IMG/VR virus record: IMGVR_UViG_3300044972_002389 | Span: 62,001 to 126,000 of that record | DNA length: 64,000 nt | Reading direction: 5' to 3' (one strand) | Shown here: one piece after another, positions 375-40,901 of the stretch | Layout: each line of letters starts with the position of its first letter | Numbering within the stretch: the first letter of the stretch is position 1 | Position numbers and translations under genes: made by a program | Notes under the pieces: model-generated | The model's database searches: none | What the model was told of the DNA's origin: nothing | What the model saw: the letters and a program-made list of their open reading frames with translations, nothing else

Positions 375-1451
375 TTGACGCAACAGCAAACTATGTTAAA
401 AAAGTGTGTAACACAGGAGACTCTGGTGACTGACAAGCGAATTGGTTTTTGCTGTAAATTTGTATCTGAAACAGAGTTCAAAGACAAGAAGAGCGCAGCA
501 GAGTGGCACAGCCTCTACAACACAAAAGGCACAACTGTAACCTCACTGGAAAAGCTCACACGTACACAAGCCATTGACAAGCTGTGTGGCATTGTGCGCT
601 ACAACACTGAGGTACTTATGAGGCAGTTTCAGCTTGTAGGCAGTTGGCCACAAGAACTCCGAATGATGCGAATTGGCAGTGAGATTCTCCCTGCTCGCAC
701 ACACGCCAATTGGAGCTCTGCCTATCAAGAATCTGTGATGATTGAAGCACTGCGCGGATTTGGGGAGGTAGGCAAACTAGCACGTGACTTCGACATTCGA
801 CTCAGCACGCATCCTGGACAGTTCACTATGCTTGTGAGTCATGAGCCCGAGGTGGTGGAGCGTGCTATTGAAGACCTCGAGTACCACTCGGAGATTTTCC
901 GGCTCATGGGCTTTGATGGAAGTGATCAGCGACAGGAGATCAACATCCATGGTGGTGCCCGTCGAGACGATTTCCTTGATTACTTTCAACACAGCTTTGC
1001 TCGGCTGAGCAGTGACACAAAGCAATGGCTGAGTGTGGAGAATGATGAGTACAGTTACGGTCTCGATCATCTCTTGCCCTTGAAAGACAAGGTGAAGATC
1101 TGTCTCGACATCAACCACTACTGGATTCATCAAGGAACGTATCTCAGTCCAGATGACCCAAGGCTGACCCAGGTGATTGAAAGTTGGCGTGGTGCACGTC
1201 CAGAAATTCATGTGGCTTGGCCGCACGAAGATGTACTTCCCTCCCACAGCAACACAACCAGGCCAGACATTGCGTTGCTCGAGTCAAGTGGTATCAAACG
1301 AAGCAAGCTGCGTGCCCACAGCAAGCGACCTTGGAACAAGGCGTTGAACAGCTACTGTCTTGAGTTTTGGGATAGGATGGATCTCATGTGCGAAGCCAAG
1401 GAAAAGAATTTAGCTGCTAGAGAATTATATGACTATTCTCAAACACTATAA
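375..1451 (+). CDS. uvsE: UV-damage endonuclease (UvsE/UvdE family)
   Basis: Motifs RIGFCCK, MMRIGSEILP, RLSTHPGQFTML, INIHGG, LSVENDE, LDINHYW, HVAW, LRAHS and DLMCEAKEKNLA fit the UVDE TIM barrel; TTG start. Confidence 0.9.
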   Translation: MTQQQTMLKKCVTQETLVTDKRIGFCCKFVSETEFKDKKSAAEWHSLYNTKGTTVTSLEKLTRTQAIDKLCGIVRYNTEVLMRQFQLVGSWPQELRMMRIGSEILPARTHANWSSAYQESVMIEALRGFGEVGKLARDFDIRLSTHPGQFTMLVSHEPEVVERAIEDLEYHSEIFRLMGFDGSDQRQEINIHGGARRDDFLDYFQHSFARLSSDTKQWLSVENDEYSYGLDHLLPLKDKVKICLDINHYWIHQGTYLSPDDPRLTQVIESWRGARPEIHVAWPHEDVLPSHSNTTRPDIALLESSGIKRSKLRAHSKRPWNKALNSYCLEFWDRMDLMCEAKEKNLAARELYDYSQTL

Positions 1452-3376: not shown

Positions 3377-3382
3377 TATTTA
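3377..3382 (-). promoter_or_regulatory. Late promoter core TAAATA (minus strand)
   Basis: tattta on the plus strand, upstream of the ATG at 3346. Confidence 0.55.
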
Positions 3383-4111
3383 GAAACCAAAATGCTCTTG
3401 TAAGATCTTGTCTATTTTGTGCAGTTGTTGAGTTACAGGCCCTAATAGGCAGTGAGTCCAGTGAGAAGGAACTATCGGAGGCAAGTAGCCGTCAATGTCC
3501 CGATTTAAATTTAACACGTTGATTACACTAGGACAATCCAACACTTTTGCGAAGTTATCAACAGGAACAACTGAGCCTGATGTTCCAATACACAGGAACA
3601 GGCTTTTGTCTGTAAGGCTGTCCAGTGTGTTGTAGAGATATTGGTATTTGGGTGCTGGTTCACCAAACAACACTACCGCAGGCTTGACATCAGTCAGGCT
3701 TTGGCAATTGGGACAACCTAGGGAGATGTTGTATCGAGTGTAGCCAATATTCCAAACATGGCCACAGTTTTCGCATTGCATTTCATCCAGCTGTCCGTGA
3801 ACATGCACAACAGGGATGCAACCAGCCTCCTCTAGCAAGAGGTCTGCATTTTGAGTTATCACTGTTGCACTGTATTTTCTCTGCCATTCTGCCACCTGTT
3901 TGTGGGCGGCGTTTGGCTGAAACTTCAGAAGCATTTCCCGTAAGTCGCTGTGAAATTCATTTACAATTTGAAAGTTTTGTCGCCAAGTGGCGTAATTACT
4001 GTAAACCAATGGATCATAACGGCTCCATAAACCTTCGCTATCTTCTCTAAATGTGGGGATGCCGCTTTCAGCACTCAAACCAGCGCCGCTAAAAATCAAT
4101 AATTGGGTCAT
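3380..4111 (-). CDS. Sir2/CobB-family NAD-dependent deacylase
   Basis: FSGAGLSAESGIPTFR, PNAAH, ITQNAD, HVHG, Zn ribbon CENC/CPNC, KPAVVLFGE, IGTSGSV; likely start MTQLLIF at 4111. Confidence 0.92.
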   Translation of the reverse strand: MTQLLIFSGAGLSAESGIPTFREDSEGLWSRYDPLVYSNYATWRQNFQIVNEFHSDLREMLLKFQPNAAHKQVAEWQRKYSATVITQNADLLLEEAGCIPVVHVHGQLDEMQCENCGHVWNIGYTRYNISLGCPNCQSLTDVKPAVVLFGEPAPKYQYLYNTLDSLTDKSLFLCIGTSGSVVPVDNFAKVLDCPSVINVLNLNRDIDGYLPPIVPSHWTHCLLGPVTQQLHKIDKILQEHFGF

Positions 4112-4197
4112 AATTTTGATTATGCAACAAATTTCTGGAGGGTTGCAATCCAATTCTCATGTTTACTGCCTTTGTATTGTGCTCACTGTCCAGACAA

Positions 4198-4203
4198 TAA
4201 ATA
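4198..4203 (+). promoter_or_regulatory. Late promoter core TAAATA
   Basis: Ends 4 nt before the ATG at 4208; heads the 4208-12554 plus-strand run. Confidence 0.6.
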
Positions 4204-4207
4204 TACT

Positions 4208-4846
4208 ATGCCATATTTGAATCATAATATCCCCGTTTTAACATGCCTAATACGTAACCAATACCTTTACAATCACACCAAAGGCCACGGCGAGTTCACT
4301 CCCTGTGATGTACACAGTGTCGCAAGTATGGAGAAACGCACGCCTTTATTTGAAGCATTTTTGGAAAATGGAGTGAACTGGACACGTCGACCCATAACTG
4401 CTTTTTGTTGGCGTAATGATGCACCAGTAAGACCACTTGCAGAACATGTTTATTGGGACTGTTTCAGTCATTATATTGATGTGCAGGTCCGGCAACGCAT
4501 GGCGGGGTTAAGGGCTACGTTGTTGGTTTACACTGGGGAACGTCGTCAAGGACAATACTGTATGACTTTAGACTGGGGTTGGGAAAACTCTGCTTTTACT
4601 GACACCAATTTCAGTGAAACGCCTGAACACAAATGCGCGCATTTGTTCAAAATGGATGAAGGAAACTATTATCTTTATCCCAACAATAGAATCATTTGGC
4701 ATGACAATGCTTGGGTGAAAAATCCTATAACCAGTAATCCTGGGTATCAAATAGACATGACAGTCTACAGTGTGGAGAACGCTGTGGACTTTTATACAGA
4801 TGACAGCTATATGACACATGTGGAGCCTGTAAATGAAGCTGGTTGA
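4208..4846 (+). CDS. Conserved phage hypothetical protein
   Basis: MPYLNHN...IRNQYLYNHTKGHGEF...PLFEAFLENGVNWTRRP resembles a family I recall from T4-like phages; function unknown. Confidence 0.75.
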   Translation: MPYLNHNIPVLTCLIRNQYLYNHTKGHGEFTPCDVHSVASMEKRTPLFEAFLENGVNWTRRPITAFCWRNDAPVRPLAEHVYWDCFSHYIDVQVRQRMAGLRATLLVYTGERRQGQYCMTLDWGWENSAFTDTNFSETPEHKCAHLFKMDEGNYYLYPNNRIIWHDNAWVKNPITSNPGYQIDMTVYSVENAVDFYTDDSYMTHVEPVNEAG

Positions 4847-7800
4847 TATTTTGGAAAACAAGGAGGACCAACAGAATCAAAAACCCAGTGTGTTCAGCCA
4901 GTGGGAAGACACTGACCCAAAGAATGACAAGCCGGAAGAGTCAAAAAATAATCCCAGTGAACTCTATCATAGCACTATACTAGACAATGCGCCTAATATC
5001 CTGCAATCAGGATATATAACAACCTCTATCTACAAAGATCCAGCCAAGGATATAGTGTTTGATTCTCGCTCTACAACACCCCATACATCACCAACTATAG
5101 CTGTTCTCACTTCTTGTGGGACACTGATGCAAACCTACAACGAACAAATTTCTCGCCAGCTAACGACGGCAAGCAGTCAACTGGGAACGCAAAGCAAAGC
5201 CTATCGAGCCTTGCGTGCCATCAGTCACGTTTTGGAATCACAGAAGCTTTTTGAAAACGATCCACAACTAGGTAACAACAGCATTTGGCTCTACACTGAA
5301 GGTTGCCAAAGTGCATTGCACATACTGCTCGACAACAAGACAGCAAAAATCACTTGGTTAGGTAGTTTGAATGGCACTGGTAGGCAACTTTTGGAGCAGG
5401 GGTTAGCACAAAGCCAGAAACAAGGTGCCTTACTCGCTGTTGTGAAACCCATCTGGAACAGCCACAAATTTTATGAGAAGATGGGATTTCAAGATCAAGG
5501 AACTGGTTATTGGAACTTACCTCTTGAGGAATCAGCTAATCAACTGGATCGCGCAGATCTAGAAGACTTATTGGGTGCAATCACATATGAGCAAGAAGAG
5601 ATTAACGACGCCAGCTATGATGCTGCGGGACCAAAGTATGAAAAACTTGACAAGGATTTCAAAGCCTTAGAGGCTGTTGCTTATGTGGTTAAAAATAACT
5701 TACGAGCACTTGACAATCCCAACTTGGGAAAAAATAGCATTTTCCTCTATAACTATACCCCAGATCTAGGCGTGTTCAGTGTAACTGCAATACATGTGGT
5801 GATTGAAAATCAAGTGGCGCATGTGAAATGGTTGGGCAGTTATGACAACAAACCTGGTGCTGGCAAAGCGTTGATGTTACAAGCCTTGACTATCGCAAAG
5901 AACAAAGGGGCCACCAAGAGCGTCGTAGAGGCCAAATGGGAAAGCGAAGGCTTTTATCACAAGCTGGGTTACGATGTGGAGAACAGAGGATCAAACAACC
6001 CATTTACAGGCACCAGTTTAGTCCAAATGGGAAAGAAGTTGGAAGAAGCTTGGACTGATGAAGACCAGCGTATGGTTCACAAAAATCCCACAATTCAAGA
6101 TTTGAAAAGGTTGGCACGCAACAACAAGTATCACAGTGCCAGATTTGTGATCTACAAAGATGGCAGTGTTGTGGCTGCGGATAGCGAACATTATACTCAC
6201 CACAGTGCTGCACCTGCCATGGGCGCTTGGGCTTTGAGAGGGTATGTGCAATACTTGGGTGGCAACGACTATGCCTATCGCAGCATGGAAGTCTACAGTC
6301 CCAAAAGTGTTGACCATCCTCTTTTCCGCAAGTGGGAATCTAGTGGTATAGAGAATGGCAATCCCTCTGTTGTTGAGGAAAAATGGACCAAAAAGTATAA
6401 GAAGAGTATCAACTGCTCTAATCCTCAAGGGTTCAGCCAACGTGCTCACTGTGCTGCTAGACGCAAACGACAAAAGGGCGGAAAGACAACTAGCAAGCCC
6501 TTGAATGAAAACAATAACGTAGAAATACACAACTATAAAAAGCTGGATCGCATCTTAGTTGCATTGTGTAACCTAGTTGACACCAGACGAAAGAAAAACC
6601 CTGACAAATACGGATGGGTAGCCGCAGGGTTGTTGGATCCCCGCAACCGTCTTGTAATAGGTTTCAGCACATTTGCCAATGACAAATGGTATCATGCTGA
6701 ACGATTGGCTATGAGGGCTTATCGTAAAAAATACGGAAGCATACCTGATGGCTGTATAATTGTAACCACATGCAGTCCATGCAGCGAGCAGATGCCAAGA
6801 TATGGTGAAAGTTGTACTGACCTAATCAACAAGAGTCCTGTCAAAAAAGTCTATTGCGGCTACTCTGATACAACTCAATCCCAAAGTCAACGCACTTTCA
6901 ATATTATGGTTACTGCTGATACAAACATACGAGAACGGTGCCAAAAATTTGCTGAAAACTTCATGGATTGGGAAGCGCAATATTTGGATGAAAGCTTGCG
7001 TGATTGGTTCAAACAAAAATGGGTGCGATTTGGGACAGATGGCAAGATCAGAGGCGACTGTGCTAGAGGCAGTGAAGGCGAAGGCAAGCCCAAATGCCTG
7101 CCACAGCGGAAGGCTTGGGCACTGGGCAAGAAAAAACGTGCAACTGCTGCTAGGCGCAAGCGTAGAGAAGATCCCAATCCTGAACGTGAAGGCAAGGCCC
7201 GGAACGTAGCCACAAAAGAAAGTGTTGGCTCTACAAAATTGGGAGATCTCTGCACTATCAAAACTAATTTTCCTGATGCTGACTTTTGGCTTGTGCGACG
7301 CAGTGATAGAACAAATGTGGGCACACCAGCCAAAGAATTCAGTCCCTATCATATTGGAATCAAAGTCACAGCTACTGAACAGCTGATGCCAGAATATCTC
7401 TACTATATGATGATGCATCTCCACAACCAAGGCTATTGGAACAGTCGAAGCATGGGCATGAGCAATCTTGTGCACATACGCACAGAAGATGTGAAAAACA
7501 TACAACTGGCTTTGACAGAGCATGAGCTGAAAGAAAACTCCAGTTGTCCACATTGCGGAGGCCAAATGGTTAACTACTCTATGCTCAGTGAAAAACAAGA
7601 TGCCTGCTACTACAAAGTCAAGAGTCGCTACAAAGTTTGGCCCAGTGCCTATGCCAGCGGTGCATTAGTGCAGTGCAGGAAAAAGGGTGCAAAAAACTGG
7701 GGCAAGAGCAAGACAAATGAAAGCATAAGCATTGATCAACAAGAGGAACATGGAGGTCTCGAAGCCTACATAACTGATACATCTACCCCACAATTGGTCA

Positions 7801-8561
7801 ATTATCTTGCAAGTGAAAATGCACCCGCCGACCTTGCAGAAAAATTGCAACGCAGATACAAAACAATAGCTGTGTTCAAAAACATATGGGTCGAGGAAGA
7901 TCATCAAGGGTCTGGAGTAGGTAGCTGGATTTTAGAGGCTGGTATTGGGGATGCAATAGACAACCAGGCTCATGCTGTCATTCTCACTGCTGTCTCAGAT
8001 GATCCCAAAAGACAATCACAACTTGAGAAATGGTATAAGTCTTATGACTTCAAAGAAATAGCTCGCAGTTCAACTGGGTATCCTGTGATGTTACTAGATT
8101 TAAACAAAGACCAGGTCTCAGAAGCTGCCCCGTGGCTCGGGCAGGGAGATGAGCCACTGCCCACTAAACTCTATCATGTCACAAGAACAAGAAACCGTTT
8201 GAGCATACGCCAGAGAGGACTTGTTCCCAAAACAAAGGAACATGATCATATATTGCGACAACCAGGTGTGTTTCTGTTTGAAACTTTTGAACAAGCTGAA
8301 GATTGGGCTTACTATTGGAGTCAAGATGAGGGCGAGAGTATGGATATATGGGAAATCAAGGTTCAAGATCCCAATGATCTAACTCCTGATCCAGCATTGG
8401 ATATTCAGCACGATTACGATGCATGGGTCATCTACAAGCCAATTCCTGCAGCCAATGTGAGGCTGAAATTTACGCAACGCTGGCCGGAACCTTGGGGAAA
8501 GCCTACTACAACGGTGAAAAAAATCCGCAACCTTGAAGAAGATCCTAATGAAACTGAATGA
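4833..8561 (+). CDS. 1242-aa modular protein: GNAT, GNAT, unknown, basic Cys module, Zn-deaminase, basic module, HsdS/TRD-like, Zn ribbon, basic module, GNAT, ART-like
   Basis: GNAT A/B motifs (GTGRQLL..FYEKMGF; GAGKALM..FYHKLGY; QGSGVGSWIL..WYKSYDF), HAE...SPC deaminase motif, LYHVT..GLVP ART-like motif; modules bounded by LEES, LEEA, VVEE, LNEN, LDES, TKES, LTEH, LSEK, TNES, VSEA. Confidence 0.85.
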   Translation: MKLVDILENKEDQQNQKPSVFSQWEDTDPKNDKPEESKNNPSELYHSTILDNAPNILQSGYITTSIYKDPAKDIVFDSRSTTPHTSPTIAVLTSCGTLMQTYNEQISRQLTTASSQLGTQSKAYRALRAISHVLESQKLFENDPQLGNNSIWLYTEGCQSALHILLDNKTAKITWLGSLNGTGRQLLEQGLAQSQKQGALLAVVKPIWNSHKFYEKMGFQDQGTGYWNLPLEESANQLDRADLEDLLGAITYEQEEINDASYDAAGPKYEKLDKDFKALEAVAYVVKNNLRALDNPNLGKNSIFLYNYTPDLGVFSVTAIHVVIENQVAHVKWLGSYDNKPGAGKALMLQALTIAKNKGATKSVVEAKWESEGFYHKLGYDVENRGSNNPFTGTSLVQMGKKLEEAWTDEDQRMVHKNPTIQDLKRLARNNKYHSARFVIYKDGSVVAADSEHYTHHSAAPAMGAWALRGYVQYLGGNDYAYRSMEVYSPKSVDHPLFRKWESSGIENGNPSVVEEKWTKKYKKSINCSNPQGFSQRAHCAARRKRQKGGKTTSKPLNENNNVEIHNYKKLDRILVALCNLVDTRRKKNPDKYGWVAAGLLDPRNRLVIGFSTFANDKWYHAERLAMRAYRKKYGSIPDGCIIVTTCSPCSEQMPRYGESCTDLINKSPVKKVYCGYSDTTQSQSQRTFNIMVTADTNIRERCQKFAENFMDWEAQYLDESLRDWFKQKWVRFGTDGKIRGDCARGSEGEGKPKCLPQRKAWALGKKKRATAARRKRREDPNPEREGKARNVATKESVGSTKLGDLCTIKTNFPDADFWLVRRSDRTNVGTPAKEFSPYHIGIKVTATEQLMPEYLYYMMMHLHNQGYWNSRSMGMSNLVHIRTEDVKNIQLALTEHELKENSSCPHCGGQMVNYSMLSEKQDACYYKVKSRYKVWPSAYASGALVQCRKKGAKNWGKSKTNESISIDQQEEHGGLEAYITDTSTPQLVNYLASENAPADLAEKLQRRYKTIAVFKNIWVEEDHQGSGVGSWILEAGIGDAIDNQAHAVILTAVSDDPKRQSQLEKWYKSYDFKEIARSSTGYPVMLLDLNKDQVSEAAPWLGQGDEPLPTKLYHVTRTRNRLSIRQRGLVPKTKEHDHILRQPGVFLFETFEQAEDWAYYWSQDEGESMDIWEIKVQDPNDLTPDPALDIQHDYDAWVIYKPIPAANVRLKFTQRWPEPWGKPTTTVKKIRNLEEDPNETE

Positions 8562-11442
8562 CCTATTGAACAAGCCTACCAGTAGCGTAGCTGAGCTGGC
8601 TAAAAAATACAAAGTGTCAACAGACTCTGTGGAGAAACAGCTGGCACAGGGCATCAAAGTGGAGATGGAACACACCCGGTTGCGGAGTGTGGCGCGAGAA
8701 ATAGCCTTGGATCACTTGGGTGAGGATCTTAACTATTACAAGAAATTGAGCAAACTTGAGAAAAAGCCTGCTCAAGAAGCTCTTCTGATAGAGCTGTTTG
8801 CCCTGCTAAATGAAGTAAAAATCGACAATGTGAGTGGCATTGGGGAAGTGCCTGACAATAAGAATGTGGATTATCTTGGCTTGAGAGTCGCGATGAAGCC
8901 CAGTGTATTTTTGAAATTGGCTAGCCCTTTGTCAAGAGAACATGCTGGGAGTGTGGATTATATCAAACAGCAACTAGATCAAGGGCAGGGAATGGCCAGT
9001 CCTTGGCTGGTCTTAGACATACCAATAGAATGGGAAAAAGGTCGTTATAATAAATCCGCAAGAGTAATTGGGCACGAAGGCCGCAACAGAATGTATGCGG
9101 TCCTAGAAACTGAAGGCGATGCACCTGTTGAAACTCATTTGTTTTTTGTCGGTGGATTGCGTGCTAGGCACATCAAACCTGAATGGATTGAAGCACTCAA
9201 CCTGCGTCTTGTACCACAGAGAGCAAACACTAGTGTATCTGGCCCGTTTTTTGAACTGCTGTTAAAGACTCAAAAAAGTCTCTCAGAAGAAAATGAAAAC
9301 AAAAGAGACACATACCGTGTAACCTGGAGAGGTAGATTGGGCGAATATGATCCCAATTATTTTGACATCAAAAGTGACCCACTTGAAGACGATGATGGCA
9401 AAGTCATCGCCGTAAAAGATCAGCTTGTTCCCAAATCTCATTTGCGTGCCAATTTAAACATAACTCCAAATCCCAACCTAGTGTATAGGGGCATGAGTAA
9501 TCATGAATTTCAAAATATCAAAAAAACAGGAGTGATACAAAGCAAAGGCGAGTATAACTTGGCTGGGCAACAGGGCTTAACCTATTTTTCAACTGAACCC
9601 AGGTCAGCTGAAACTTATGCTCATAGTTTTGCACCATGGAATCAAAAAGCCAACTGGGACAATCCAGCATGGGTAATTGCAGTGCCCAAACCTGATGAAT
9701 CAAAAATTGTGCATGTGCAAGGCACAGGATCACATGAAGTGGGAGTCAAAGGCTCTATACCAGCGAATCAAATAAGGGAGATATACCGAGGAAAGGTTGT
9801 AGAATACGATCCTGGTGTGCACAACCAAGTTGCACCATCAGCATGGCTGCATTGGGAGAAAATGCCTGTTGATACATTGTTAACAGAGCGCAAAGGTGCG
9901 CCTGGCACTCTCAAATCCAAAATCACCAGACTGTATGGCGGAGGTGTCACATGTGACAAAACACAAAAACTCAAAACACGCCAGGGTGCTACAACTCTAG
10001 ACAAACGCCAAGCCAACTGGTTTCAAAACAAACATTGCGGCGGAGCAACTAGAGTTGATGAAATCATAAGTGGTGAGCATATTCCAGGCGATTGGAAAAA
10101 ATATGGAAGCGGCGACGCAGAAATGTTTGAAACAGAGTTTGATCTTCAAGGATATAAGATCACAATAAGTGTGAGTCGGGATTGGGCCCAATCTGGTGCC
10201 TATGTGTTGATGAAGAAAAACATAGAGGCTGGAGCAAACCTGGTTGGCAGAGAAATAATATTCAGGGTAGATGGCGAAACTGATCCAACAGGCTTACTAG
10301 GCACAGGTGCAGCGAATGTAATTTCAATTGTTGTAGGAAAAATCATAGGACTACTACAAAATATAGAATGGGACTATTTGGTCTTCGCAGGTGCTGGGGA
10401 CAGTAGACAAAGAGTATATACTAAAATATTGAGTCAGATATCTCCAGGACTTGATTCAGAGCCAATGCAATTTGGAGATTGGTTCCTGCTGATCAAAAAC
10501 CATTTGTTGGCAGCAAAATCTCAAGAGCTGGATGAAGTTTTTAAAGGCAAGCCACTTCCTGGAGATTGGCAATCAATAAAGGGCGGTTCAACCCACTACA
10601 CTGAATTTGAATTTGCTGGCAGTGAAGTGCAAATAGCAGTCGTAAAAGACGCTTCTTATGAGCTTCAAACTATCTTGCAAAAGCAAGTGCCAGAAAACTG
10701 GGTTGGATATGAAGTGTCCTTCTCTGTAGATCACAGCATCTCTGTAACAGGTATGTTTGACCAAAAAAGTGCCCAATTATTTGATTTGATTATACGAAAA
10801 CTCAAATGGTTTTTCCAGACCCACAGCTGGGACTACATCAACTTCAGTGGGGATGAGCGCAGCCGCAACAAGCTCTATCTCCGGCTGGCAAAACAGTTGG
10901 CACCTGCTGATAGCACAGTGTTGCACACTAACAAAAGCTTTGCAATTGTCAAGCAGGACAAGCTTGCATCATTCACTAACTTGGACGAAAGTTTAAGTTA
11001 CAAAGGTTTGCGTCCTGGAGCAAATATTTGGTATGAGCCTGGCATGCAATATTCCCAATATAATTTATATCCAGGCAAAAGTATTGTGGGCCAGCGAGTA
11101 TACCATATGACCAATAAGCTTACAAGTATAATAAAGTCAGGCGGACTGAAACCAAAATATGATGAGACTGGTGCTAGAGAATTTGGCCGATATAGCACTG
11201 TGGAATATCCTTTCACTCCAGTTATTGCTATATTTTTTGATGTTGGTGAGCATGATTGGTTTGGCAAATACATCTTAAGTTGGGAAATAACACCTGAGGA
11301 TAAAACTGCACGAGCATATATGCCAGTAGATACCATGCAGCCTTCAGATAGAGATAATTTGCTGCCCAATTGTCAGGTAACACCTGTAAGTATTGATAGG
11401 ATTACTATCACAGATCTCAAAGGAAACCTTATAAAAGTATGA
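8548..11442 (+). CDS. ~964-aa modular protein: small helical domain, ParB-like, ART-like (YRG/YFST/E), basic Cys module, two copies of an unknown domain, ART-like (VYH/GLKP)
   Basis: Probable start MKLNDLLN at 8548 overlapping the previous stop; IGHEGRNR ParB-like motif; junctions LNE, LSEE, LTE, VDE, LDE, LDES. Confidence 0.85.
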   Translation: MKLNDLLNKPTSSVAELAKKYKVSTDSVEKQLAQGIKVEMEHTRLRSVAREIALDHLGEDLNYYKKLSKLEKKPAQEALLIELFALLNEVKIDNVSGIGEVPDNKNVDYLGLRVAMKPSVFLKLASPLSREHAGSVDYIKQQLDQGQGMASPWLVLDIPIEWEKGRYNKSARVIGHEGRNRMYAVLETEGDAPVETHLFFVGGLRARHIKPEWIEALNLRLVPQRANTSVSGPFFELLLKTQKSLSEENENKRDTYRVTWRGRLGEYDPNYFDIKSDPLEDDDGKVIAVKDQLVPKSHLRANLNITPNPNLVYRGMSNHEFQNIKKTGVIQSKGEYNLAGQQGLTYFSTEPRSAETYAHSFAPWNQKANWDNPAWVIAVPKPDESKIVHVQGTGSHEVGVKGSIPANQIREIYRGKVVEYDPGVHNQVAPSAWLHWEKMPVDTLLTERKGAPGTLKSKITRLYGGGVTCDKTQKLKTRQGATTLDKRQANWFQNKHCGGATRVDEIISGEHIPGDWKKYGSGDAEMFETEFDLQGYKITISVSRDWAQSGAYVLMKKNIEAGANLVGREIIFRVDGETDPTGLLGTGAANVISIVVGKIIGLLQNIEWDYLVFAGAGDSRQRVYTKILSQISPGLDSEPMQFGDWFLLIKNHLLAAKSQELDEVFKGKPLPGDWQSIKGGSTHYTEFEFAGSEVQIAVVKDASYELQTILQKQVPENWVGYEVSFSVDHSISVTGMFDQKSAQLFDLIIRKLKWFFQTHSWDYINFSGDERSRNKLYLRLAKQLAPADSTVLHTNKSFAIVKQDKLASFTNLDESLSYKGLRPGANIWYEPGMQYSQYNLYPGKSIVGQRVYHMTNKLTSIIKSGGLKPKYDETGAREFGRYSTVEYPFTPVIAIFFDVGEHDWFGKYILSWEITPEDKTARAYMPVDTMQPSDRDNLLPNCQVTPVSIDRITITDLKGNLIKV

Positions 11443-13888: not shown

Positions 13889-14168
13889 GGCTGCACTCAA
13901 AGCAAGGATACATTTTTATAGATCTTTGACTCAAAGATCTAAATGGATTGTAATGTTTTTTTTGGAGATTTTAGGTACAGCCAGCATACTGCTGGCTGTC
14001 GCCGTTTAAGCCTTTCAAATATTACCTTTGAGCACATTGTATTTGTTTTGGTTGTTTGGCAGTGTAGCCTTGACCATCAGCAGTATTTTGCGTAAGAATC
14101 TATTACTCGCTGTAATGATGTTGTTTTATACAGGGTTGAATTTATATGGATTATGGAGTTTTGGATGA
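13878..14168 (+). pseudogene. Small membrane-protein gene with an in-frame TAA
   Basis: GTG 13878 frame gives hydrophobic FFLEILGTASILLAVAV, TAA at 14007-14009, then AFQILPLSTLYLFWLFGS...LYGLWSFG to TGA 14166-14168, which overlaps the polymerase ATG as ATGA. Confidence 0.65.
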
Positions 14169-16921
14169 CGTATGTTGATGCTATTTTGGAGAAAGACAAA
14201 CACTGTATTCAAGTTGTGGAGCGTGTAAACCACAAACGAGTCTACAACACATATCCCAGCAAATACGTAATGTATTTTCCCAGTGAGCGTGGAAAATACA
14301 CTAGCATTTATGGTGAACGGCTGGATAAATTTGAAACCAATCGTTGGGAAGAGTTTCAAAGAGAGTGTCGCTTGGTTCCAAAAACACAACAATATGAAAG
14401 TGATAGCAATCCCATTTTCCGTTGTTTTTATGAACATTACAAAAATACAGCAAGTCCACAGTTGCATGTGGCGTTTTTTGACTTGGAAACTGATTTTGAT
14501 CCTGATCGGGGCTTCTCGTCAACTGACGAGGCGTTCAATCCCATTACAGCAGTATCTGTATATTTGAGTTGGCTGGGCAAAAACTTTACTCTTGTCCTCA
14601 AACCCAAAACACTCACAGTAGAGCAAGCATCAGCAGTTGTGGACAAATTTGAAGACACTGTGCTGTGTAGCAATGAAACTGAGCTATTGGATGTGTTTCT
14701 CACCCTCATTGAGGATGCAGATGTTCTCACAGGTTGGAATTCAGAGGGTTATGATATTCCCTATTTGCACAATCGTATCATTCAAATTTTGAGTAAGGAG
14801 CACACTAAAAGGCTGTGTCTCTGGAACAAATTTCCCAAGAAAAGGGAGTATGAAAGCTATGGCAAGCCCACTATTACTTTTGATCTAGTGGGCAGAGTCC
14901 ATCTTGACTATCTGCAACTGTACCGCAAGCATACCTATCACGAGATGCACAGTTATCGACTGGACTTTGTGGGCGAGTATGAAGTGGGCGACAAGAAGAT
15001 AGCTTACGAAGGCAGCTTGGACAAGCTCTATAACGAAGACTTTGAAAAGTTCATTGCCTATAACAGGCAAGACGTTATGCTGTTGGTGAAAATTGATCGC
15101 AAGCTGAAATTCATTGATCTAAGCAATGATCTAGCACACACAAACGGAGTGTTGATCCAAACAACAATGGGGTCAGTACAGCTTATTGACAATGCCATTA
15201 CTAACGAAGCACATGATCTTGGCTTATGTGTTCCTACTCGACGTAGAGACAATCCTGAAATCATGAAAGACGATCAGGGTGAAGACATTGAGCCCAATGG
15301 TATTGCTGGTGCATATGTGGCTGACCCAGTTGAAGGCATGCACAAATGGATTGGCGGTGTAGACATCAACAGTCTATATCCCAGTGCTATTCGAAGTTTG
15401 AACATGAGCAAGGAAACAGTAGTGGGGCAAATCCGCCCTGTGGGTAATGATCGTTTGATTCAACACAGGATGCAAAAGGAAAAACGCACTTTTGCTGACA
15501 GTTGGAACGAGATGTTTGGCATTATTGAGTATAACCAAGTGATGAATAGGGAAATGGTTATGCTGACTGTGGACTTTGAAGACGGCACCACTGTGGAACT
15601 CAGTGCTGACGAACTGTATCAATGGATTTTTGAAAATCCCAAAAAGCAAATGACGCTCAGTGCCAATGGCACTATTTTTGATCTCAACAAGGAAGGTGTG
15701 GTACCAGGCTTGCTGGCCCGCTGGTATGGTGAGAGAAAGGAGTTGCAGGCAGAAGCCAAAGCATGTTTCAAAAAAGCTGATGAAGAACCTAATCCCTCTA
15801 AGAAGAGTGAGTATCAAGAAAAAGCTGATTTTTATGACAGAAGGCAGTTGATTAAGAAAATTTTGCTAAATTCACTTTATGGAGCTATCGGAAATTCTAG
15901 CTCATCGTGGTTTGACAACCGTATTGCACAAAGTACTACTTTAACAGGTAGATGTATCGTCAAACACATGGGTAGTAAGATCAATGAGGTAATATCAGGG
16001 AAATATCACTACAAAGGTGATGCTGTCATATATGGCGACACCGACAGCATTTATTTTAGCGCATATCCAGTAATGAGCCAGCTTGAAGACTTCAAAAGCT
16101 TTGATTGGAGTCGTGAAGCAGTGGTGCAACTGTATGATCAAGTTGCAGACATCACTAACCAAAGCTTTCCTGGATTTATGAAACAGGCATTCAATGTACC
16201 TGAATCCAGGAGTGTGATCAAAGCTGGCCGTGAACTAGTAGCAAGCCATGGATTGTTCATTACCAAAAAACGGTATGCTGTGATGATCTACGACAAAGAA
16301 GGCAAGCGAAAGGATGTAGATGGCAAGCCAGGTGAGATCAAAGTTATGGGGCTTGATCTCAAGAGAAGTGATACACCAAAACCAGTCCAGGACTTCTTGA
16401 GTGAGATTTTAACTTTGGTTTTGACTGAGGTTGACAAAGACAGCATTTTCACGCGCATCAAGGAGTTCCGCACAGAGTTCAGCCAATGGCCCAGCTGGGC
16501 AAAAGGCAGCCCCAAAAGGGTGAATAACCTTACTCAATATGGCATGATTAAGAAAGCTCAGGAAAGCGTTGACCTCAACAAAGACACTGGGAAAAGAAAA
16601 ACTATTCCGGGCCATGTCCTTGCGAGCCTAAACTGGAACCTATTGTGTGAGATCTACAACGATTATGGATCAATGCGAATTCAAGACGGGCAAAAGGTGA
16701 TTGTCTGTAAGCTGAGATCAAACCCTTTGGGTATGACATCTGTTGCATACCCTGTAGATCAACTGTATCTTCCTGATTGGTTCAAGTCTATGCCTTTTGA
16801 CAACGCTCTTATGGAGGCCACAATTTTGGACAAGAAACTGGAAAACTTGTTGGGTGTATTGCACTGGAATCTTGAAGATGCCAAAAACAACGAAACTTTT
16901 GACAGCATGTTTAGTTTTTGA
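14165..16921 (+). CDS. Family B DNA polymerase (T4 gp43-like) with 3'-5' exonuclease
   Basis: ExoI FFDLET, ExoII GWNSEGYDIPY, ExoIII YNRQDV, DINSLYPS, KKILLNSLYG, YGDTDS, KKRYA; start MTYVDA at 14165; no intein seen. Confidence 0.97.
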   Translation: MTYVDAILEKDKHCIQVVERVNHKRVYNTYPSKYVMYFPSERGKYTSIYGERLDKFETNRWEEFQRECRLVPKTQQYESDSNPIFRCFYEHYKNTASPQLHVAFFDLETDFDPDRGFSSTDEAFNPITAVSVYLSWLGKNFTLVLKPKTLTVEQASAVVDKFEDTVLCSNETELLDVFLTLIEDADVLTGWNSEGYDIPYLHNRIIQILSKEHTKRLCLWNKFPKKREYESYGKPTITFDLVGRVHLDYLQLYRKHTYHEMHSYRLDFVGEYEVGDKKIAYEGSLDKLYNEDFEKFIAYNRQDVMLLVKIDRKLKFIDLSNDLAHTNGVLIQTTMGSVQLIDNAITNEAHDLGLCVPTRRRDNPEIMKDDQGEDIEPNGIAGAYVADPVEGMHKWIGGVDINSLYPSAIRSLNMSKETVVGQIRPVGNDRLIQHRMQKEKRTFADSWNEMFGIIEYNQVMNREMVMLTVDFEDGTTVELSADELYQWIFENPKKQMTLSANGTIFDLNKEGVVPGLLARWYGERKELQAEAKACFKKADEEPNPSKKSEYQEKADFYDRRQLIKKILLNSLYGAIGNSSSSWFDNRIAQSTTLTGRCIVKHMGSKINEVISGKYHYKGDAVIYGDTDSIYFSAYPVMSQLEDFKSFDWSREAVVQLYDQVADITNQSFPGFMKQAFNVPESRSVIKAGRELVASHGLFITKKRYAVMIYDKEGKRKDVDGKPGEIKVMGLDLKRSDTPKPVQDFLSEILTLVLTEVDKDSIFTRIKEFRTEFSQWPSWAKGSPKRVNNLTQYGMIKKAQESVDLNKDTGKRKTIPGHVLASLNWNLLCEIYNDYGSMRIQDGQKVIVCKLRSNPLGMTSVAYPVDQLYLPDWFKSMPFDNALMEATILDKKLENLLGVLHWNLEDAKNNETFDSMFSF

Positions 16922-36086: not shown

Positions 36087-37301
36087 ATGGCTAAGGCAGC
36101 TCAAGAGAAAATCCAGACAATCACTACTGTCAGTCCCAGCAAGCTGAAGGTGATGATCGATCACGTGACGCGTAGGAAGCGACCTCTCTTCATCGCCGGC
36201 CCTCCTGGCATTGGCAAGAGTGACATTGTTGCAGAGGTTGCTCGTGCTCAGAAGCGCCCACTGATTGACATTCGACTTCCCCTACTTGAGGCCACTGACA
36301 TTCGAGGCATTCCGCACCTCGCAGAAGTGACTATCCGCGATGCAGAAGGCAACGTGGTAAAGAATGAGCACAACGTTCCACTGACAGAGAAGATTTTCAA
36401 GTGGAGCAACCCTACCGATCTGCCCACTGATCCCAACAGCCGCGCAATGGTGTTTTTTGATGAGATGAGCGCAGCACCACCCTCTGTGCAGGCTGCCACA
36501 TATCAGCTGATCCTGAACCGGCGCATTGGCAGTTACCAGCTGCCTGATGATGCAGTGATGGTTGCTGCTGGTAACCGAGTGCGTGACAAGGGTGTGGCCT
36601 ACAACATGCCAACTCCGCTGGCAAATCGCTTCATCCATGCAACGCTGGCTGTGGACTTTGATGACTGGCAGGAATGGGCTATGATGAATCGCATCCACGA
36701 GCATGTGGTGGGTTACCTCAGCTATCAGCCCAATGATCTCTTTGACTTTGATCCCCGTCGCGAAAGCTATGCGTTTGCTACCCCACGTAGCTGGAGCTTT
36801 GTCAGCGAACTGCTGTATGAGCCCCAACTGGATGGCAGCTACCGCGAGACGGATCTGCCAGCAGATGTGCTTGGCGATCTCATCAAGGGCACTGTAGGTG
36901 AGGGTCCTGCCCTGAAGTTCCTCAGCTATCGTCGACAAGCAGCTAACCTACCCCGTGCACGCGACATCCTTGATGGCACAGTCACCAAGCTGAACGTGAA
37001 GCAGATGGACATTTGCTATGCACTGACCACTGCACTGGTGTATGAGCTCACAGATGATGTCAAGAAAGCTGAGAGTAATAAGCAGAATGGTGTGAAGAAT
37101 TCGCACGATGACATGTATAAGAGCGCCGATCGCTTCTTCCAGTTCATGATGGACAACTTTGAACCGGAGATGGTTGTAATGGGTGCTCGGTCGTTTATGG
37201 CAACTACACGTGACCACCCCATCAAGCCAAATCAACTGAGTTCATGGAAAGTTTTTGTGAAACAATATTCGTCACTTATTCCGAGCATGAACGCAAACTA
37301 A
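36087..37301 (+). CDS. MoxR-family AAA+ ATPase
   Basis: Walker A GPPGIGKS, Walker B VFFDE, sensor AAGNR, PLANRF and ATPRSW. Confidence 0.92.
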   Translation: MAKAAQEKIQTITTVSPSKLKVMIDHVTRRKRPLFIAGPPGIGKSDIVAEVARAQKRPLIDIRLPLLEATDIRGIPHLAEVTIRDAEGNVVKNEHNVPLTEKIFKWSNPTDLPTDPNSRAMVFFDEMSAAPPSVQAATYQLILNRRIGSYQLPDDAVMVAAGNRVRDKGVAYNMPTPLANRFIHATLAVDFDDWQEWAMMNRIHEHVVGYLSYQPNDLFDFDPRRESYAFATPRSWSFVSELLYEPQLDGSYRETDLPADVLGDLIKGTVGEGPALKFLSYRRQAANLPRARDILDGTVTKLNVKQMDICYALTTALVYELTDDVKKAESNKQNGVKNSHDDMYKSADRFFQFMMDNFEPEMVVMGARSFMATTRDHPIKPNQLSSWKVFVKQYSSLIPSMNAN

Positions 37302-38779: not shown

Positions 38780-39216
38780 TTGCTTTCTTGTAGGTGTATG
38801 AAACTTCCAGTGTTGCATACTTTTGTTAAAAGATCTGCTATATGCGTGAATCTAGAGGATATTTTGTAATTCTAAGCTGTTTCATTACCAAAAAATCATA
38901 AGGTAATTACAGATCCTACAACACAGTCGTCAAGTCTCTTGGAGAATTGGTAGTAGCGACCACTTTTTTTGGACTGTATGCTATCCAATATCAAACTCAT
39001 TGTGAGTATTTGCCGGCGTCGATCTCAAGTTATTTGTGCAACCACACCAACAGGGCTGTTGATGTCTCTTATAAGGATGTGCACAAAACTATGCAAAGGA
39101 TCACTTATAGTGGCAGAGAACTTTGGATTTTGTTTAATTATGCTGTTGAGCAGTGGGCTACCTGCTCCAGGTAACGCACTGCTCAAGTGAAACTCTTTTA
39201 AATTTACTGTTTGCAT
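38780..39216 (-). pseudogene. Decayed sulfotransferase gene
   Basis: FHLSSALPGAGSPLLNSIIKQNP resembles the sulfotransferase 5'-PSB loop (LPRSGSTLL...QNP); in-frame TGA at 39027-25, then DRRRQIL..ILDS remnants and further stops/frameshifts. Confidence 0.7.
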
Positions 39217-40901
39217 ACTAACATTCCCAGATCGGGAAGATACAGGTAGTGGATATCACAGTTGAAGATTGTTATCAAGGCGTCTACCAGTGTTTCCACC
39301 AATGGCTGCCCAGCTAGATTGAAACTAGTGTTAAACAGCAACGGTGTTTCGGTTTGTTGCCGAAAAGCATCTAGCAGCTGATACAAATGCAAGTTTTGCT
39401 CGCTGGTGACAGTTTGTACTCTGCAGGTGCCATCCACATGTGTAACTGCAGGAATCAACTCTCTTTGGCTTTCCTTCACATTTACAGCATACATCATGTA
39501 AGGGCTTTCATTGAGATTGCGCATGTCAAACCAGTCATTTGCATGTTCTGCCATCACACTCGCAGCAAAAGGGCGGAACCATTCACGATTTTTAACTTGG
39601 TTAACAATATCCTTGCCGTTGGTTACTCGAGGATCAAAAAGAATGCTTCTGTTGCCTAGTGCACGAGGCCCACCTTCACTAGCGCCTTGAAACAAAGCCA
39701 CAATATTGCCTTCTGCCAGCAGTAGTGCCACTTCAGCAGGTGATGTGTCTCTCATGCTGATACCTTCAACAGAAGCAATAGTGGTTTCAATCTGATTATA
39801 GTCTGGCAACACACTCAAGTAGAGATGAGAGAGTGGTTGAGGTGTAGTATCTTGGCTCAGAACATAATAAGCATGCCGAGCTAAACCAATGGCTGTTCCA
39901 CCATCATGTGCAATGGGATCAATGTAAAACTCAATATTAGGGAAACGTTCTAGATATTTGTAGTTGGCAACACAGTTGAGTGCATAACCACCACTGATTA
40001 CAATGCGATTTTCTCCAGTAATGTCAATAGCACGCTCAATCAACTTCACCATCTGCTCTTCAGTTTCTTTCTGCACATGGTAGGCTAGATTCTTGTCTTG
40101 ATCTCGCACTAATTCAAAGTTATTATGCCAGTCACTTGGTTGTGTGTATCTACGCAAGTAAGGAAATCTATTCTCGTCAATGTGTGCGCCGGTGGGATAT
40201 CGAGGAATCAACAAGTTCTTGTTGCCTTTATTGTTGATGAAAAAGGCAGGAATGTTGCTGTCTTCTTGGCCATAAGGAGCTAGTCCCATGGTCTTCCCAG
40301 CTTCAATAGCCCCAAATCCTAAATAATCACTTACACTCTCGTATGCCTTAACAATAGTAACATTATTATCAAATTCTTGGATACCGTTGTCGTAGTAGAG
40401 GCTGGTTTCCGCACCGTCACTGTATCTTTTGTAAACTGCGTTGAACTCATGTGGATAGCTGCAATGATAGATGCTTTCAGTTTCAAAACCCCCAGTAAGT
40501 GGTAGTCCTTCTCCCATGCTTTCTTGCACATAGCTTCCGGCCCCATCTACGACCAAGGCGCATGCTGTTTCAAAACCACTGCCATAGAAGGCATTAGCTG
40601 CATGACCCAAGTGATGTAGATGGCCCATTAGGGTAACTTGCACATTAGGACTGAATTTGCGAGCTAATGCAGCATAGGCATTCTCGTTAGTCCAAGGAAG
40701 AGTAACCCAATTAGTGGTGGTCCCACCAATGATCAAGTGGTCTACCAAATGATTAGTTAGTACCCATAGCATGGCTCTAAATGGATTACCGTCATACTTT
40801 AGGCGACTCCATCGTTCTTCCTCGCTATAAAACAGCAACTTACCGTCTTCAACAAGCGCCACACTGCTGTTGTGACCGGGATTGATGGCCATTATTTTCA
40901 T
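39204..40901 (-). CDS. O-carbamoyltransferase (NodU/CmcH/TobZ family)
   Basis: GHNSS, HHLGHA..AF, VVDGAG, AGKTMGLAPYG, SGGYALNC, HDGGTAIG, E.GPRALGNRSIL, KNREWFRPFA, HVDGTCR.QTV, NTSFNLAG.PL. Confidence 0.95.
   Translation of the reverse strand: MKIMAINPGHNSSVALVEDGKLLFYSEEERWSRLKYDGNPFRAMLWVLTNHLVDHLIIGGTTTNWVTLPWTNENAYAALARKFSPNVQVTLMGHLHHLGHAANAFYGSGFETACALVVDGAGSYVQESMGEGLPLTGGFETESIYHCSYPHEFNAVYKRYSDGAETSLYYDNGIQEFDNNVTIVKAYESVSDYLGFGAIEAGKTMGLAPYGQEDSNIPAFFINNKGNKNLLIPRYPTGAHIDENRFPYLRRYTQPSDWHNNFELVRDQDKNLAYHVQKETEEQMVKLIERAIDITGENRIVISGGYALNCVANYKYLERFPNIEFYIDPIAHDGGTAIGLARHAYYVLSQDTTPQPLSHLYLSVLPDYNQIETTIASVEGISMRDTSPAEVALLLAEGNIVALFQGASEGGPRALGNRSILFDPRVTNGKDIVNQVKNREWFRPFAASVMAEHANDWFDMRNLNESPYMMYAVNVKESQRELIPAVTHVDGTCRVQTVTSEQNLHLYQLLDAFRQQTETPLLFNTSFNLAGQPLVETLVDALITIFNCDIHYLYLPDLGMLVCKQ

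What the first reader, a model, noticed from the sequence alone, without database searches (positions are those of the whole stretch)
7212..7520. Stand-alone type I R-M specificity-subunit (HsdS TRD)-like module
Seen: TKLGDLCTI...LMPEYLYY...G....I..EDVKNIQL between TKES and LTEH. Known: KLGD(V/I)C, L.P.YLYY.L and I...DL..I.IP are conserved HsdS segments. Inference: a half HsdS delivered with the genome could be a dominant-negative anti-restriction decoy or could shield recognition sites.
Basis: partly seen in the sequence, partly recalled or inferred. Interest (0 to 1): 0.65.

Follow-up and report, generated by a model that had tools for sequence, protein, structure and literature searches.

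The report
Mini-TRD module in phage multi-effector protein
The flagged stretch is a real, stripped-down copy of the DNA-reading domain of restriction-enzyme specificity subunits. It is not a separate gene but one module of a 1,242-residue multi-effector protein of a jumbo phage, and it belongs to a large uncharacterised family also carried as a small gene on many conjugative plasmids.

Summary
The resemblance is real. Residues 802-892 of the ORF at 4833-8561 (nt 7236-7508) fold with high confidence (pLDDT 94.7). The best 14 structural matches are all target-recognition domains (TRDs) of HsdS, type II S subunits or TRD-bearing methyltransferases (Z 9.6-4.0), and unrelated folds score 3.1 or less. 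A family profile aligns to an HsdS TRD profile (hhalign 96%, E 4e-9).

The segment is not stand-alone: it is an internal module of a 1,242-aa protein with three GNATs and a deaminase, whose modules come and go between near-identical relatives. It is not half an HsdS either. It lacks about 47 N-terminal TRD residues and the coiled-coil helices. No hsdM or hsdS was found in the 223-kb record.

The family has 379 clusters. It occurs fused to polyvalent-protein effector domains, never to a methyltransferase, and as a 95-aa gene on 269 plasmids, where a strand-helix-HTH gene follows it.

The module is basic, and one loop evolves fast. My best reading is a methyltransferase-independent DNA-recognition module of an early counter-defence protein. 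That function is inferred. The decoy idea is untested.

The parts
4833..8561 (+). 1,242-aa multi-domain ('polyvalent'-type) ORF that contains the finding
   Evidence: Single open frame. Pfam/PHROG domains. The identical ORF is present on five other IMG/VR contigs, L002-L006.
7236..7508 (+). Mini-TRD module (aa 802-892), the core of the finding
   Evidence: Domain borders come from 379 homologous clusters and from loci that match only q796/802-892/893. TRD fold: Z 9.6. hhalign to HsdS TRDs: E 4.4e-9.
7440..7475 (+). Fast-evolving loop of the mini-TRD (aa 870-881), between the long helix and the last-but-one strand
   Evidence: 8 of the 11 amino-acid differences from the close relative L007 fall here. 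Module dN/dS is 0.44, against 0-0.07 in the flanks.
5250..5522 (+). GNAT acetyltransferase module 1 (about aa 140-230)
   Evidence: FR47 187-227 and phrog_1249 181-230.
5700..6047 (+). GNAT acetyltransferase module 2 (about aa 290-405)
   Evidence: Acetyltransf_10 342-402, E 1e-9.
6588..6860 (+). Cytidine/dCMP-type zinc deaminase module (aa 586-676)
   Evidence: PF00383, E 9.5e-10.
6993..7211 (+). Small basic Cys-containing module directly upstream of the mini-TRD (aa 721-793)
   Evidence: phrog_23735 3-75/81, E 2.9e-11.
7521..7724 (+). Cys-rich stretch plus DUF5872-like module directly downstream (aa 897-964)
   Evidence: phrog_3477 and phrog_38880 917-971; weak PF19197. This lies where HsdS would have its coiled-coil helix.
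7725..8105 (+). GNAT module 3 (aa 965-1091), a cassette that is absent from close relatives
   Evidence: Acetyltransf_7 1012-1075, E 9.8e-14. Exactly this stretch is missing in L007-L010.
8106..8558 (+). C-terminal module (aa 1092-1242) with weak Tpt1/KptA- and DUF7002-like matches
   Evidence: PF01885 E 0.012 and PF22531 E 0.19, both below cut-off.
8533..11442 (+). Adjacent 969-aa second multi-domain ORF, overlapping the end of the first
   Evidence: DUF5661, E 2.5e-11; weak DUF6934. Both families also occur in mini-TRD fusion proteins elsewhere.

Best explanation
SHOWN. Residues 802-892 of the ORF 4833-8561 are a minimal (about 92 aa) target-recognition-domain fold, remotely homologous to the TRDs of HsdS and of type IIG/BREX methyltransferases. 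Compared with canonical TRDs, about 47 residues between the first strand and the core hairpin are missing, and so are the coiled-coil conserved regions. The module sits inside a multi-effector protein (three GNATs, a deaminase, small basic/Zn modules) of an uncultivated jumbo phage whose polymerase is nearest to Atu_ph07. Cassettes of this protein are gained and lost between near-identical relatives. The module belongs to a large mobile-element family found solo, at protein termini or internally. It is fused to polyvalent-protein effectors and never to a DNA methyltransferase.

INFERRED. The module works without a methyltransferase as a nucleic-acid (most likely DNA) recognition or binding unit. 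It either tethers the effector array to DNA or occupies DNA or sites early in infection, as part of a counter-defence or take-over protein. Its specificity would lie in the variable loops, above all aa 870-881, which diverge fast.
For: Fold and homology. Internal position and architecture. Cassette gain and loss: in L007/L008/L010 about 455 aa are inserted at aa 511; in L007-L010 aa 965-1091 are deleted; the rest stays 90-98% identical. Family size and mobility: 379 clusters; in 80 viral loci the module is N-terminal in 33, solo in 23, internal in 21 and C-terminal in 3. Fusion partners are ART-PolyVal (9), GNAT, NUDIX, SleB-type and GH19 wall hydrolases, ParB_N, sigma-70 region 4, ArdA (1) and DUF6321, and none is a methyltransferase. 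Only 1 of 120 neighbouring genes is a methyltransferase. The own 223-kb record holds no Methylase_S or N6_Mtase. DNA-binding leaning: DNA recognition is the only role established for the TRDs among the solved matches. The family is basic, with median net charge +3 and pI 9.2. It co-occurs with DNA-binding modules: sigma r4 and ParB_N, and the Xre-HTH partner of the plasmid forms. Arms-race or specificity signal: 14 non-synonymous against 8 synonymous differences in the module, against 3 and 14 in its flanks (Fisher p 0.008), clustered in one loop.
Against: There is no direct evidence of DNA binding. The missing N-terminal sub-region is, by residue numbering, where R26 and K31 lie; PMC11754733 names these as DNA-binding residues of the T. 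tengcongensis HsdS TRD1. Part of the canonical DNA interface may therefore be gone. The family is unusually conserved for TRDs (mean column identity 50%), which could point to one constant, possibly protein, ligand. The gene lies among replication and metabolism genes, not next to head genes, so virion delivery is unsupported here. The dN/dS contrast rests on one allele pair and small counts.
Confidence: 0.5

Rival explanations
1. HsdS decoy. The mini-TRD docks onto host HsdM/HsdR, or onto another TRD-dependent enzyme such as a type IIG enzyme or BREX PglX, and poisons or misdirects it. This would give anti-restriction without any DNA binding.
For: It is a true TRD homologue. One family member is fused to ArdA, and the pKPC_UVA01 copy lies 1.6 kb downstream of an annotated antirestriction gene. 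The fast-evolving loop and the high core conservation would suit a protein target.
Against: It lacks the coiled-coil conserved regions, which from established knowledge are the main HsdM docking platform. It is basic rather than a DNA mimic. Co-folding with EcoKI HsdM gave no verdict, which counts neither way. For the orphan half-HsdS Esub1, HsdM binding could not be shown even with its helices (PMC11754733).
Confidence: 0.15
2. In-cis specificity module. As in methyltransferase-TRD enzymes, the mini-TRD positions nucleic acid for the catalytic module beside it, here the zinc deaminase 125 residues upstream. That would make a targeted DNA or RNA base deaminase.
For: The deaminase (aa 586-676) and the mini-TRD (aa 802-892) are neighbours in one chain. 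In every solved catalytic enzyme among the matches, the TRD works beside a base-flipping domain.
Against: Only 1 of 89 multi-domain family members carries a deaminase, and partners vary freely. The module also exists solo. A separate basic module lies between the two. The deaminase looks like a dCMP/cytidine type.
Confidence: 0.1
3. Protein-protein adaptor, or the toxic half of a two-gene module. The fold has been re-used for a non-nucleic-acid ligand. In plasmids the 95-aa protein and its HTH partner would form a toxin-antitoxin-like or Acr-Aca-like pair, and in phages the module would be one more effector.
For: There is a strict gene pair with an Xre-HTH protein on plasmids. The partner's fold matches include HigA, MqsA and Aca proteins. 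TA and partition genes are often nearby.
Against: Xre-HTH folds are ubiquitous and the Z values are middling. The phage clade containing the window's module has no partner. No toxicity data exist.
Confidence: 0.15
4. Chance resemblance or non-coding artefact.
For: Pfam Methylase_S does not match by HMMER.
Against: 379 homologous clusters, pLDDT 94.7, Z 9.6 with only TRDs at the top, hhalign E 4.4e-9, and the identical ORF on five further contigs.
Confidence: 0.01

Closest known systems
HsdS / Methylase_S (PF01420) target-recognition domain of type I R-M systems
   Same: Same fold (Z 9.4 to 1yf2; TM 0.82-0.85 to Methylase_S clusters) and detectable profile homology. It shares the core hairpin motif, the YL.Y helix and the last strand.
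   Different: About 92 aa instead of about 150. Some 47 residues after the first strand are missing. There are no coiled-coil conserved regions and no second TRD. It has no hsdM/hsdR partner, is never fused to a methyltransferase, and scores below Pfam's threshold.
Esub1 of Streptococcus pyogenes (PDB 8VSQ), an orphan half-HsdS
   Same: A TRD-fold protein encoded away from any type I system and proposed to bind DNA on its own (Z 7.0; PMC11754733).
   Different: Esub1 keeps a full-size TRD plus the dimerising helix, and it is a host protein targeted by a phage protein. The module here is smaller, has no helix and is encoded by mobile elements.
Polyvalent proteins of phages and conjugative elements (Iyer, Burroughs, Anand, de Souza, Aravind 2017; PMC5512222)
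   Same: Many unrelated effector domains in one chain and cassette-like shuffling. The domain repertoire is shared: GNAT in this protein, and ART-PolyVal, ParB_N, NTases and wall hydrolases in family members. The family occurs in both phages and plasmids.
   Different: The main text of that paper contains none of the terms 'TRD', 'HsdS' or 'target recognition'. No Pfam LPD model matches this module. Virion packaging or a link to MuF, portal or T4SS is not seen for this ORF.
DUF6943 (PF22105)
   Same: The nearest named family. 45 of 121 family members give weak matches, and an Atlas cluster that carries DUF6943 superposes at TM 0.90.
   Different: The window's module scores 14.7 bits against a cut-off of 27. 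DUF6943 proteins are about 130 aa, and the Atlas cluster that carries DUF6943 is mostly bacterial, Cyanobacteriota commonest. The function of DUF6943 is also unknown.
ArdA / Ocr DNA-mimic anti-restriction proteins
   Same: Possible shared purpose: early protection of incoming DNA from type I enzymes. One family member is fused to ArdA.
   Different: ArdA and Ocr are very acidic DNA mimics of an unrelated fold. This module is basic (pI about 9) and has the fold of the enzyme's own DNA reader.

Membership tests
HsdS / Methylase_S (type I specificity subunit) | TRD fold | tested here: met
   VIA Z 9.6-6.0 to TRD-bearing 7eew and to five HsdS structures (1yf2, 1ydx, 3okg, 7bst, 2y7h), with 79-91 of 95 residues aligned. 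Foldseek PDB, BFVD and Atlas agree.
HsdS / Methylase_S (type I specificity subunit) | Sequence match to PF01420 at or above the gathering score | tested here: not met
   No PF01420 hit for the segment at E up to 10, nor for any of 121 family members at E up to 1. No hit in the whole record. Only profile-profile homology: hhalign 96%, E 4.4e-9.
HsdS / Methylase_S (type I specificity subunit) | Coiled-coil conserved regions following each TRD | tested here: not met
   The model has no long helix. Solo members are 92-95 aa and stop 2-4 residues after the last strand. In this ORF a Cys-rich, DUF5872-like module follows instead.
HsdS / Methylase_S (type I specificity subunit) | Two TRDs per chain, or one TRD plus a dimerising helix (half-S) | tested here: not met
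   There is one copy in the ORF and one in the 223-kb record, and no helix.
HsdS / Methylase_S (type I specificity subunit) | Genetic linkage to hsdM (and hsdR) | tested here: not met
   No N6_Mtase in the record. No methyltransferase among the fusion partners of 89 relatives. One methyltransferase among 120 neighbouring genes. The record is only about 54% complete, so absence from the whole phage is not proven.
Polyvalent proteins (Iyer et al. 2017) | Two to fifteen unrelated domains in one polypeptide of a phage or conjugative element | tested here: met
   At least nine modules, including three GNATs and a deaminase, in a phage record.
Polyvalent proteins (Iyer et al. 2017) | Modules recombine freely; the same domain is seen solo and in many architectures | tested here: met
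   Cassette insertion and deletion between relatives that are 90-98% identical. Solo, terminal and internal forms. Varied fusion partners.
Polyvalent proteins (Iyer et al. 2017) | Delivered into the recipient with the DNA (virion-packaged or T4SS substrate) | not testable with these tools
   Only indirect evidence: relatives are fused to SleB-type and GH19 wall hydrolases and to ART-PolyVal. This ORF lies beside replication genes, not head genes.
DUF6943 (PF22105) | Score at or above Pfam's gathering threshold | tested here: not met
   14.7 bits against a cut-off of 27. Best family member E 1.8e-4.
DNA-mimic anti-restriction proteins (ArdA/Ocr) | Strongly acidic surface that mimics DNA | tested here: not met
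   Family median net charge +3 and pI 9.2; the window's module is +1 with pI 7.9.

The most novel reading that the evidence does not exclude
Mini-TRDs are an unrecognised, widespread class of mobile-element proteins that act on TRD-dependent defence enzymes (type I, IIG/IIL, BREX) or on the sites those enzymes read. Phages would deliver them early inside polyvalent proteins. Plasmids would express them from a self-regulated two-gene cassette whose second protein supplies the missing HsdS junction strand and helix fused to an HTH, in effect a split, re-purposed half-HsdS.
Probability: 0.2. Interest if true: 0.8.

Novelty: new variant of a known kind. Interest (0 to 1): 0.6.

Why it matters
In the solved catalytic enzymes, TRDs work beside a methyltransferase domain or subunit. 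Here a pared-down TRD has left that partnership and spread through phages and conjugative plasmids. The plasmids include IncX-type and KPC-carrying plasmids of Enterobacterales and many Pseudomonas plasmids, where it is annotated only as 'hypothetical protein'. If it binds DNA or defence enzymes, it would be a new and easily testable player in how incoming DNA establishes itself. It also adds a domain to the polyvalent-protein repertoire. Finally, the plasmid cassette offers a tractable E. coli model for a module first seen in an uncultivated jumbo phage.

Tried and rejected
1. Complex prediction of EcoKI HsdM (T1MK_ECOLI) with the enterobacterial plasmid solo mini-TRD scored 0.16 against a mark of 0.34, so there was no verdict. 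This is no evidence for or against binding.

2. HMMER-level searches gave nothing useful. These were Pfam on the segment at E up to 10, phmmer and a family profile against PDB sequences, and NCBIfam. The only result was weak DUF6943 matches.

3. tblastn of the window's module and of the plasmid form against 50,697 GenBank phage records found no match. The family is known so far only from metagenomic viruses, plasmids and bacterial contigs.

It worked with a 26-row subset.

5. The look-up of encoding contigs for two solo representatives returned only contigs under 1.4 kb, with no useful context.

6. The neighbourhood scan of 120 flanking genes showed no consistent partner for the phage forms.

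7. Literature: no paper mentions DUF6943, PF22105 or WP_000777021. The polyvalent-protein paper, the BREX domain survey, the accessory-gene screen and the supplements of the leading-region paper do not describe this module. PMC5651777, the HsdS-DNA structure paper, is not held, so DNA-contact residues could not be mapped residue by residue.

8. Whether the plasmid gene lies in the leading region could not be settled. In pSL483 it sits about 8 kb behind the relaxase operon. By analogy with RP4 (my own knowledge) that would be the trailing side.

9. Internal repeats between the N- and C-terminal 'LYH.T' stretches are too weak to call.
Full report
WHAT IS AT THE COORDINATES. Window 7212-7520 encodes residues 794-896 of one long + strand ORF, 4833..8561, 1,242 aa. 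It has no start or stop of its own, so 'stand-alone' is wrong for this window. The window is part of a 223-kb IMG/VR virus record estimated to be about 54% complete. Its family-B DNA polymerase (14153-16921) is closest, at 46-47% identity, to the 470-490-kb jumbo phages Atu_ph07 and Phosso.

IS THE RESEMBLANCE TO HsdS REAL? By plain HMMER it is not visible. Pfam Methylase_S does not match the segment even at E 10, and the only hint is a sub-threshold DUF6943 match. Nothing relevant appears among PDB sequences either.

An exhaustive HMMER search of 1.84 billion representatives found 379 clusters at E 0.001 or better, 240 of them at 1e-10 or better. This defines a sharp domain of about 92 residues, ORF residues 802-892. 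An AF2 model built on 121 of these homologues is very confident, with pLDDT 94.7 and pTM 0.84.

Foldseek's top PDB rows are HsdS of M. genitalium, the BsaXI S subunit and the V. vulnificus type I methyltransferase. The Foldseek-independent search of 48,161 chains puts only TRDs in ranks 1-14. These are 7eew (Z 9.6), HsdS 1yf2 (9.4), BsaXI S (8.2), PacII S (7.9), HsdS 1ydx, CamA, Esub1, HsdS 3okg, EcoR124I and EcoKI HsdS, M.BseCI, M.TaqI, PglX and BpuSI. They align 79-93 of 95 residues at rmsd 1.9-3.3 A. Unrelated folds follow at Z 3.1 or less, apart from the MmeI TRD, also at Z 3.1. BFVD and the ESM Atlas give the same answer.

I then built a profile of 15 HsdS TRDs taken from four bacterial genomes. 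hhalign of the family against it gives probability 96% and E 4.4e-9. It pairs the family's core hairpin, its YL.Y helix and its last strand with the corresponding HsdS motifs.

WHAT IT IS NOT. It is not half an HsdS. The hhalign match covers HsdS profile columns 68-145 only. Between the first strand and the core hairpin, canonical TRDs have about 47 residues, and this family has six. This agrees with the structural alignments, which match about 89 residues within HsdS TRD spans of 125-150 residues.

The coiled-coil conserved regions are absent. From established knowledge of type I enzymes, these regions hold HsdS together and dock HsdM. The model has no long helix. Solo family members are 92-95 aa and end a few residues after the last strand. 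In this ORF the next residues are a Cys-rich, DUF5872-like module. The record contains no Methylase_S, no N6_Mtase and only this one copy of the module.

THE HOST PROTEIN. The ORF carries three GNAT modules, a cytidine/dCMP-type zinc deaminase (aa 586-676), small basic Cys-containing modules on both sides of the mini-TRD, and terminal modules with weak Tpt1/KptA-like matches. The identical ORF occurs on five other metagenomic viral contigs (L002-L006).

Relatives that are 90-98% identical elsewhere show cassette changes. L007, L008 and L010 carry an extra stretch of about 455 aa inserted at residue 511. L007-L010 all lack exactly residues 965-1091, the third GNAT. The next ORF (8533-11442, 969 aa) is of the same kind.

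This is the anatomy of the 'polyvalent proteins' described by Iyer et al. 2017 (PMC5512222) for phages and conjugative elements. None of the terms TRD, HsdS or 'target recognition' occurs in the main text of that paper.

THE FAMILY. In 80 viral loci the module is N-terminal in 33, solo in 23, internal in 21 and C-terminal in 3. Among 89 multi-domain representatives the co-resident Pfam domains are ART-PolyVal (9), DUF6321, GNAT, NUDIX, GH19, sigma-70 region 4, PcfJ, ArdA (1), SleB-type wall hydrolase, ParB_N and Pol-beta NTases. None is a DNA methyltransferase. Of 120 flanking genes only one is a methyltransferase.

No cultured phage in GenBank gave a tblastn match. The solo form is on 269 PLSDB plasmids: Pseudomonas 89, Enterobacter 40, Klebsiella 38, Salmonella 29, Citrobacter 18 and Escherichia 11. 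Examples are pSL483 and pKPC_UVA01. It is always annotated 'hypothetical protein'. One UniRef cluster name, however, reads 'Restriction endonuclease subunit S'. It also occurs in 16 bacterial genome contigs from several phyla. NCBIfam has no model for it.

A SIDE DISCOVERY THAT BEARS ON FUNCTION. In the plasmid-type subfamily the 95-aa gene is followed, usually 45-60 nt later, by a conserved gene of 136-150 aa. This holds for 25 fetched loci and for 8 of 8 annotated plasmids; in pSL483 one membrane-protein gene intervenes.

The partner's model (pLDDT 90) has three parts. It starts with a short strand and a 24-residue helix, and it ends in an Xre-type HTH domain. The first 17 columns match the HsdS TRD/coiled-coil junction motif (hhalign 66%, E 5.6e-5, a short match). 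The HTH domain has Z 7.8-4.9 to AcrIF24, Aca10, Aca1, R-M controller proteins and HigA. All listed rows align to the same C-terminal part of the model and nearly all are Xre/cI-type HTH proteins or domains, but the Z values are middling.

The plasmid cassette therefore looks like a split, re-purposed half-HsdS joined to an HTH. On a tree, the partner-linked forms fall mostly in one clade: 16 of 19, with support 88/82 and a core at 98/90. The window's module falls in a phage clade of fused forms. The partner is absent from the window's record.

HOW IT PROBABLY WORKS. Shown: the fold, the homology, the truncations, the modular context, and the absence of a methyltransferase partner. The function is inferred, from three points.

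First, DNA recognition is the only role established for the TRDs in the solved enzymes. Second, the family is basic, with median net charge +3 and pI 9.2, unlike DNA-mimic anti-restriction proteins. Third, it travels with DNA-binding modules: sigma region 4, ParB_N, and the HTH partner.

The module is also the fastest-evolving part of the protein. Against L007 it has 11 amino-acid changes, 8 of them in residues 870-881, and dN/dS of 0.44. The flanking deaminase, basic and DUF5872-like modules are 99-100% identical, with dN/dS 0-0.07, at similar dS (Fisher p 0.008 on one allele pair). That loop aligns with the stretch just before the last-but-one strand of HsdS TRDs.

I therefore favour a methyltransferase-independent DNA-recognition or DNA-binding module, with specificity in its variable loops, working in an early take-over or counter-defence protein. 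My confidence in that mechanism is about 0.5; in the identity of the module it is about 0.9.

Three points count against it. The missing sub-region is, by residue numbering, where R26 and K31 lie, which PMC11754733 names as DNA-binding residues of the T. tengcongensis HsdS. The core is unusually conserved for a TRD. And nothing shows virion packaging of this ORF, which sits beside Sir2-like, ferredoxin-like and replication genes.

RIVALS. It is weakened by the missing coiled coils. The single co-folding job gave no verdict.

A deaminase-targeting role in cis (about 0.1) is weakened by the free variation of fusion partners.

A protein-adaptor, TA-like or Acr-Aca-like role (about 0.15) is suggested only by the plasmid cassette.

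Chance is excluded.

NOVELTY. The fold is known. The variant appears undescribed in what I could search: a minimal, helix-less, methyltransferase-free TRD that circulates as a cassette in polyvalent proteins and as a two-gene module on plasmids. I rate it a new variant of a known kind, with interest 0.6.

Noticed in passing
L087:3549-4821 (Enterobacter contig); also L098, L119-L121, L123-L126 and 25 loci listed: Plasmid and bacterial solo mini-TRD genes (95 aa) form a conserved two-gene cassette with a 136-150-aa partner. The partner has an N-terminal strand plus a 24-residue helix that resembles the HsdS TRD/coiled-coil junction, then an Xre-type HTH. The cassette is found on IncX-type, pKPC_UVA01, Pseudomonas, Aeromonas and Thiothrix plasmids.
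   Followed up: yes
L007:4466-8927, L008, L009:4880-8212, L010 versus window 4833-8561: Close relatives of the ORF differ by whole cassettes. L007, L008 and L010 have about 1.37 kb inserted at residue 511. L007-L010 all lack the third GNAT (residues 965-1091). The flanks stay 90-98% identical.
   Followed up: yes
window 8533-11442 (+): A second multi-domain ORF (969 aa) overlaps the end of the first. It has an N-terminal DUF5661 and weak DUF6934-like stretches. An R-S-E-like stretch near residue 320 may be an ADP-ribosyltransferase; this was not verified.
   Followed up: partly
window 4956-5100 and 8106-8558 (+): Both ends of the 1,242-aa protein carry a similar 'LYH.T...G' stretch. The C-terminal one has weak Tpt1/KptA and DUF7002 matches, so these may be ART-fold modules. 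BLASTP between the two ends is marginal (E 0.007).
   Followed up: partly
window 7599-7721 (+): The DUF5872-like stretch just downstream of the mini-TRD is 72-78% identical at the nucleotide level to hypothetical genes of about 90 Synechococcus and Prochlorococcus T4-like cyanophages. It is the only part of the ORF with DNA-level matches in GenBank phages.
   Followed up: no
window 375-1451, 1844-2485, 3380-4153 (-), 4103-4846: Upstream genes are a UvdE UV-endonuclease, a serine resolvase/invertase, a Sir2-like NAD-dependent deacetylase and a PHROG 'ferredoxin' family protein whose end overlaps the start of the big ORF.
   Followed up: no
window 43538-50674 (-), 39204-40901 (-), 36087-37301, 50948-52210: A 2,378-aa fibre-like protein with a C-terminal S74 intramolecular chaperone, a carbamoyltransferase, an AAA_5 ATPase, and a DUF2201 metallopeptidase/VWA protein.
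   Followed up: no
L099:33440-37045 (pSL483, NC_011148.1): The MOBP relaxase-region gene of this plasmid is annotated as an 'LPD7 domain-containing protein' of about 1,200 aa. That makes it a polyvalent-protein-type domain on the same plasmid that carries the solo mini-TRD.
   Followed up: no
L096 (Candidatus Pacearchaeota MAG contig) and L090 (Capnocytophaga gingivalis): Family members turn up in an archaeal (DPANN) MAG contig and in a Bacteroidota contig. The Capnocytophaga copy groups with the enterobacterial plasmid forms on the tree. This may be contamination or wide transfer and was not examined.
   Followed up: no
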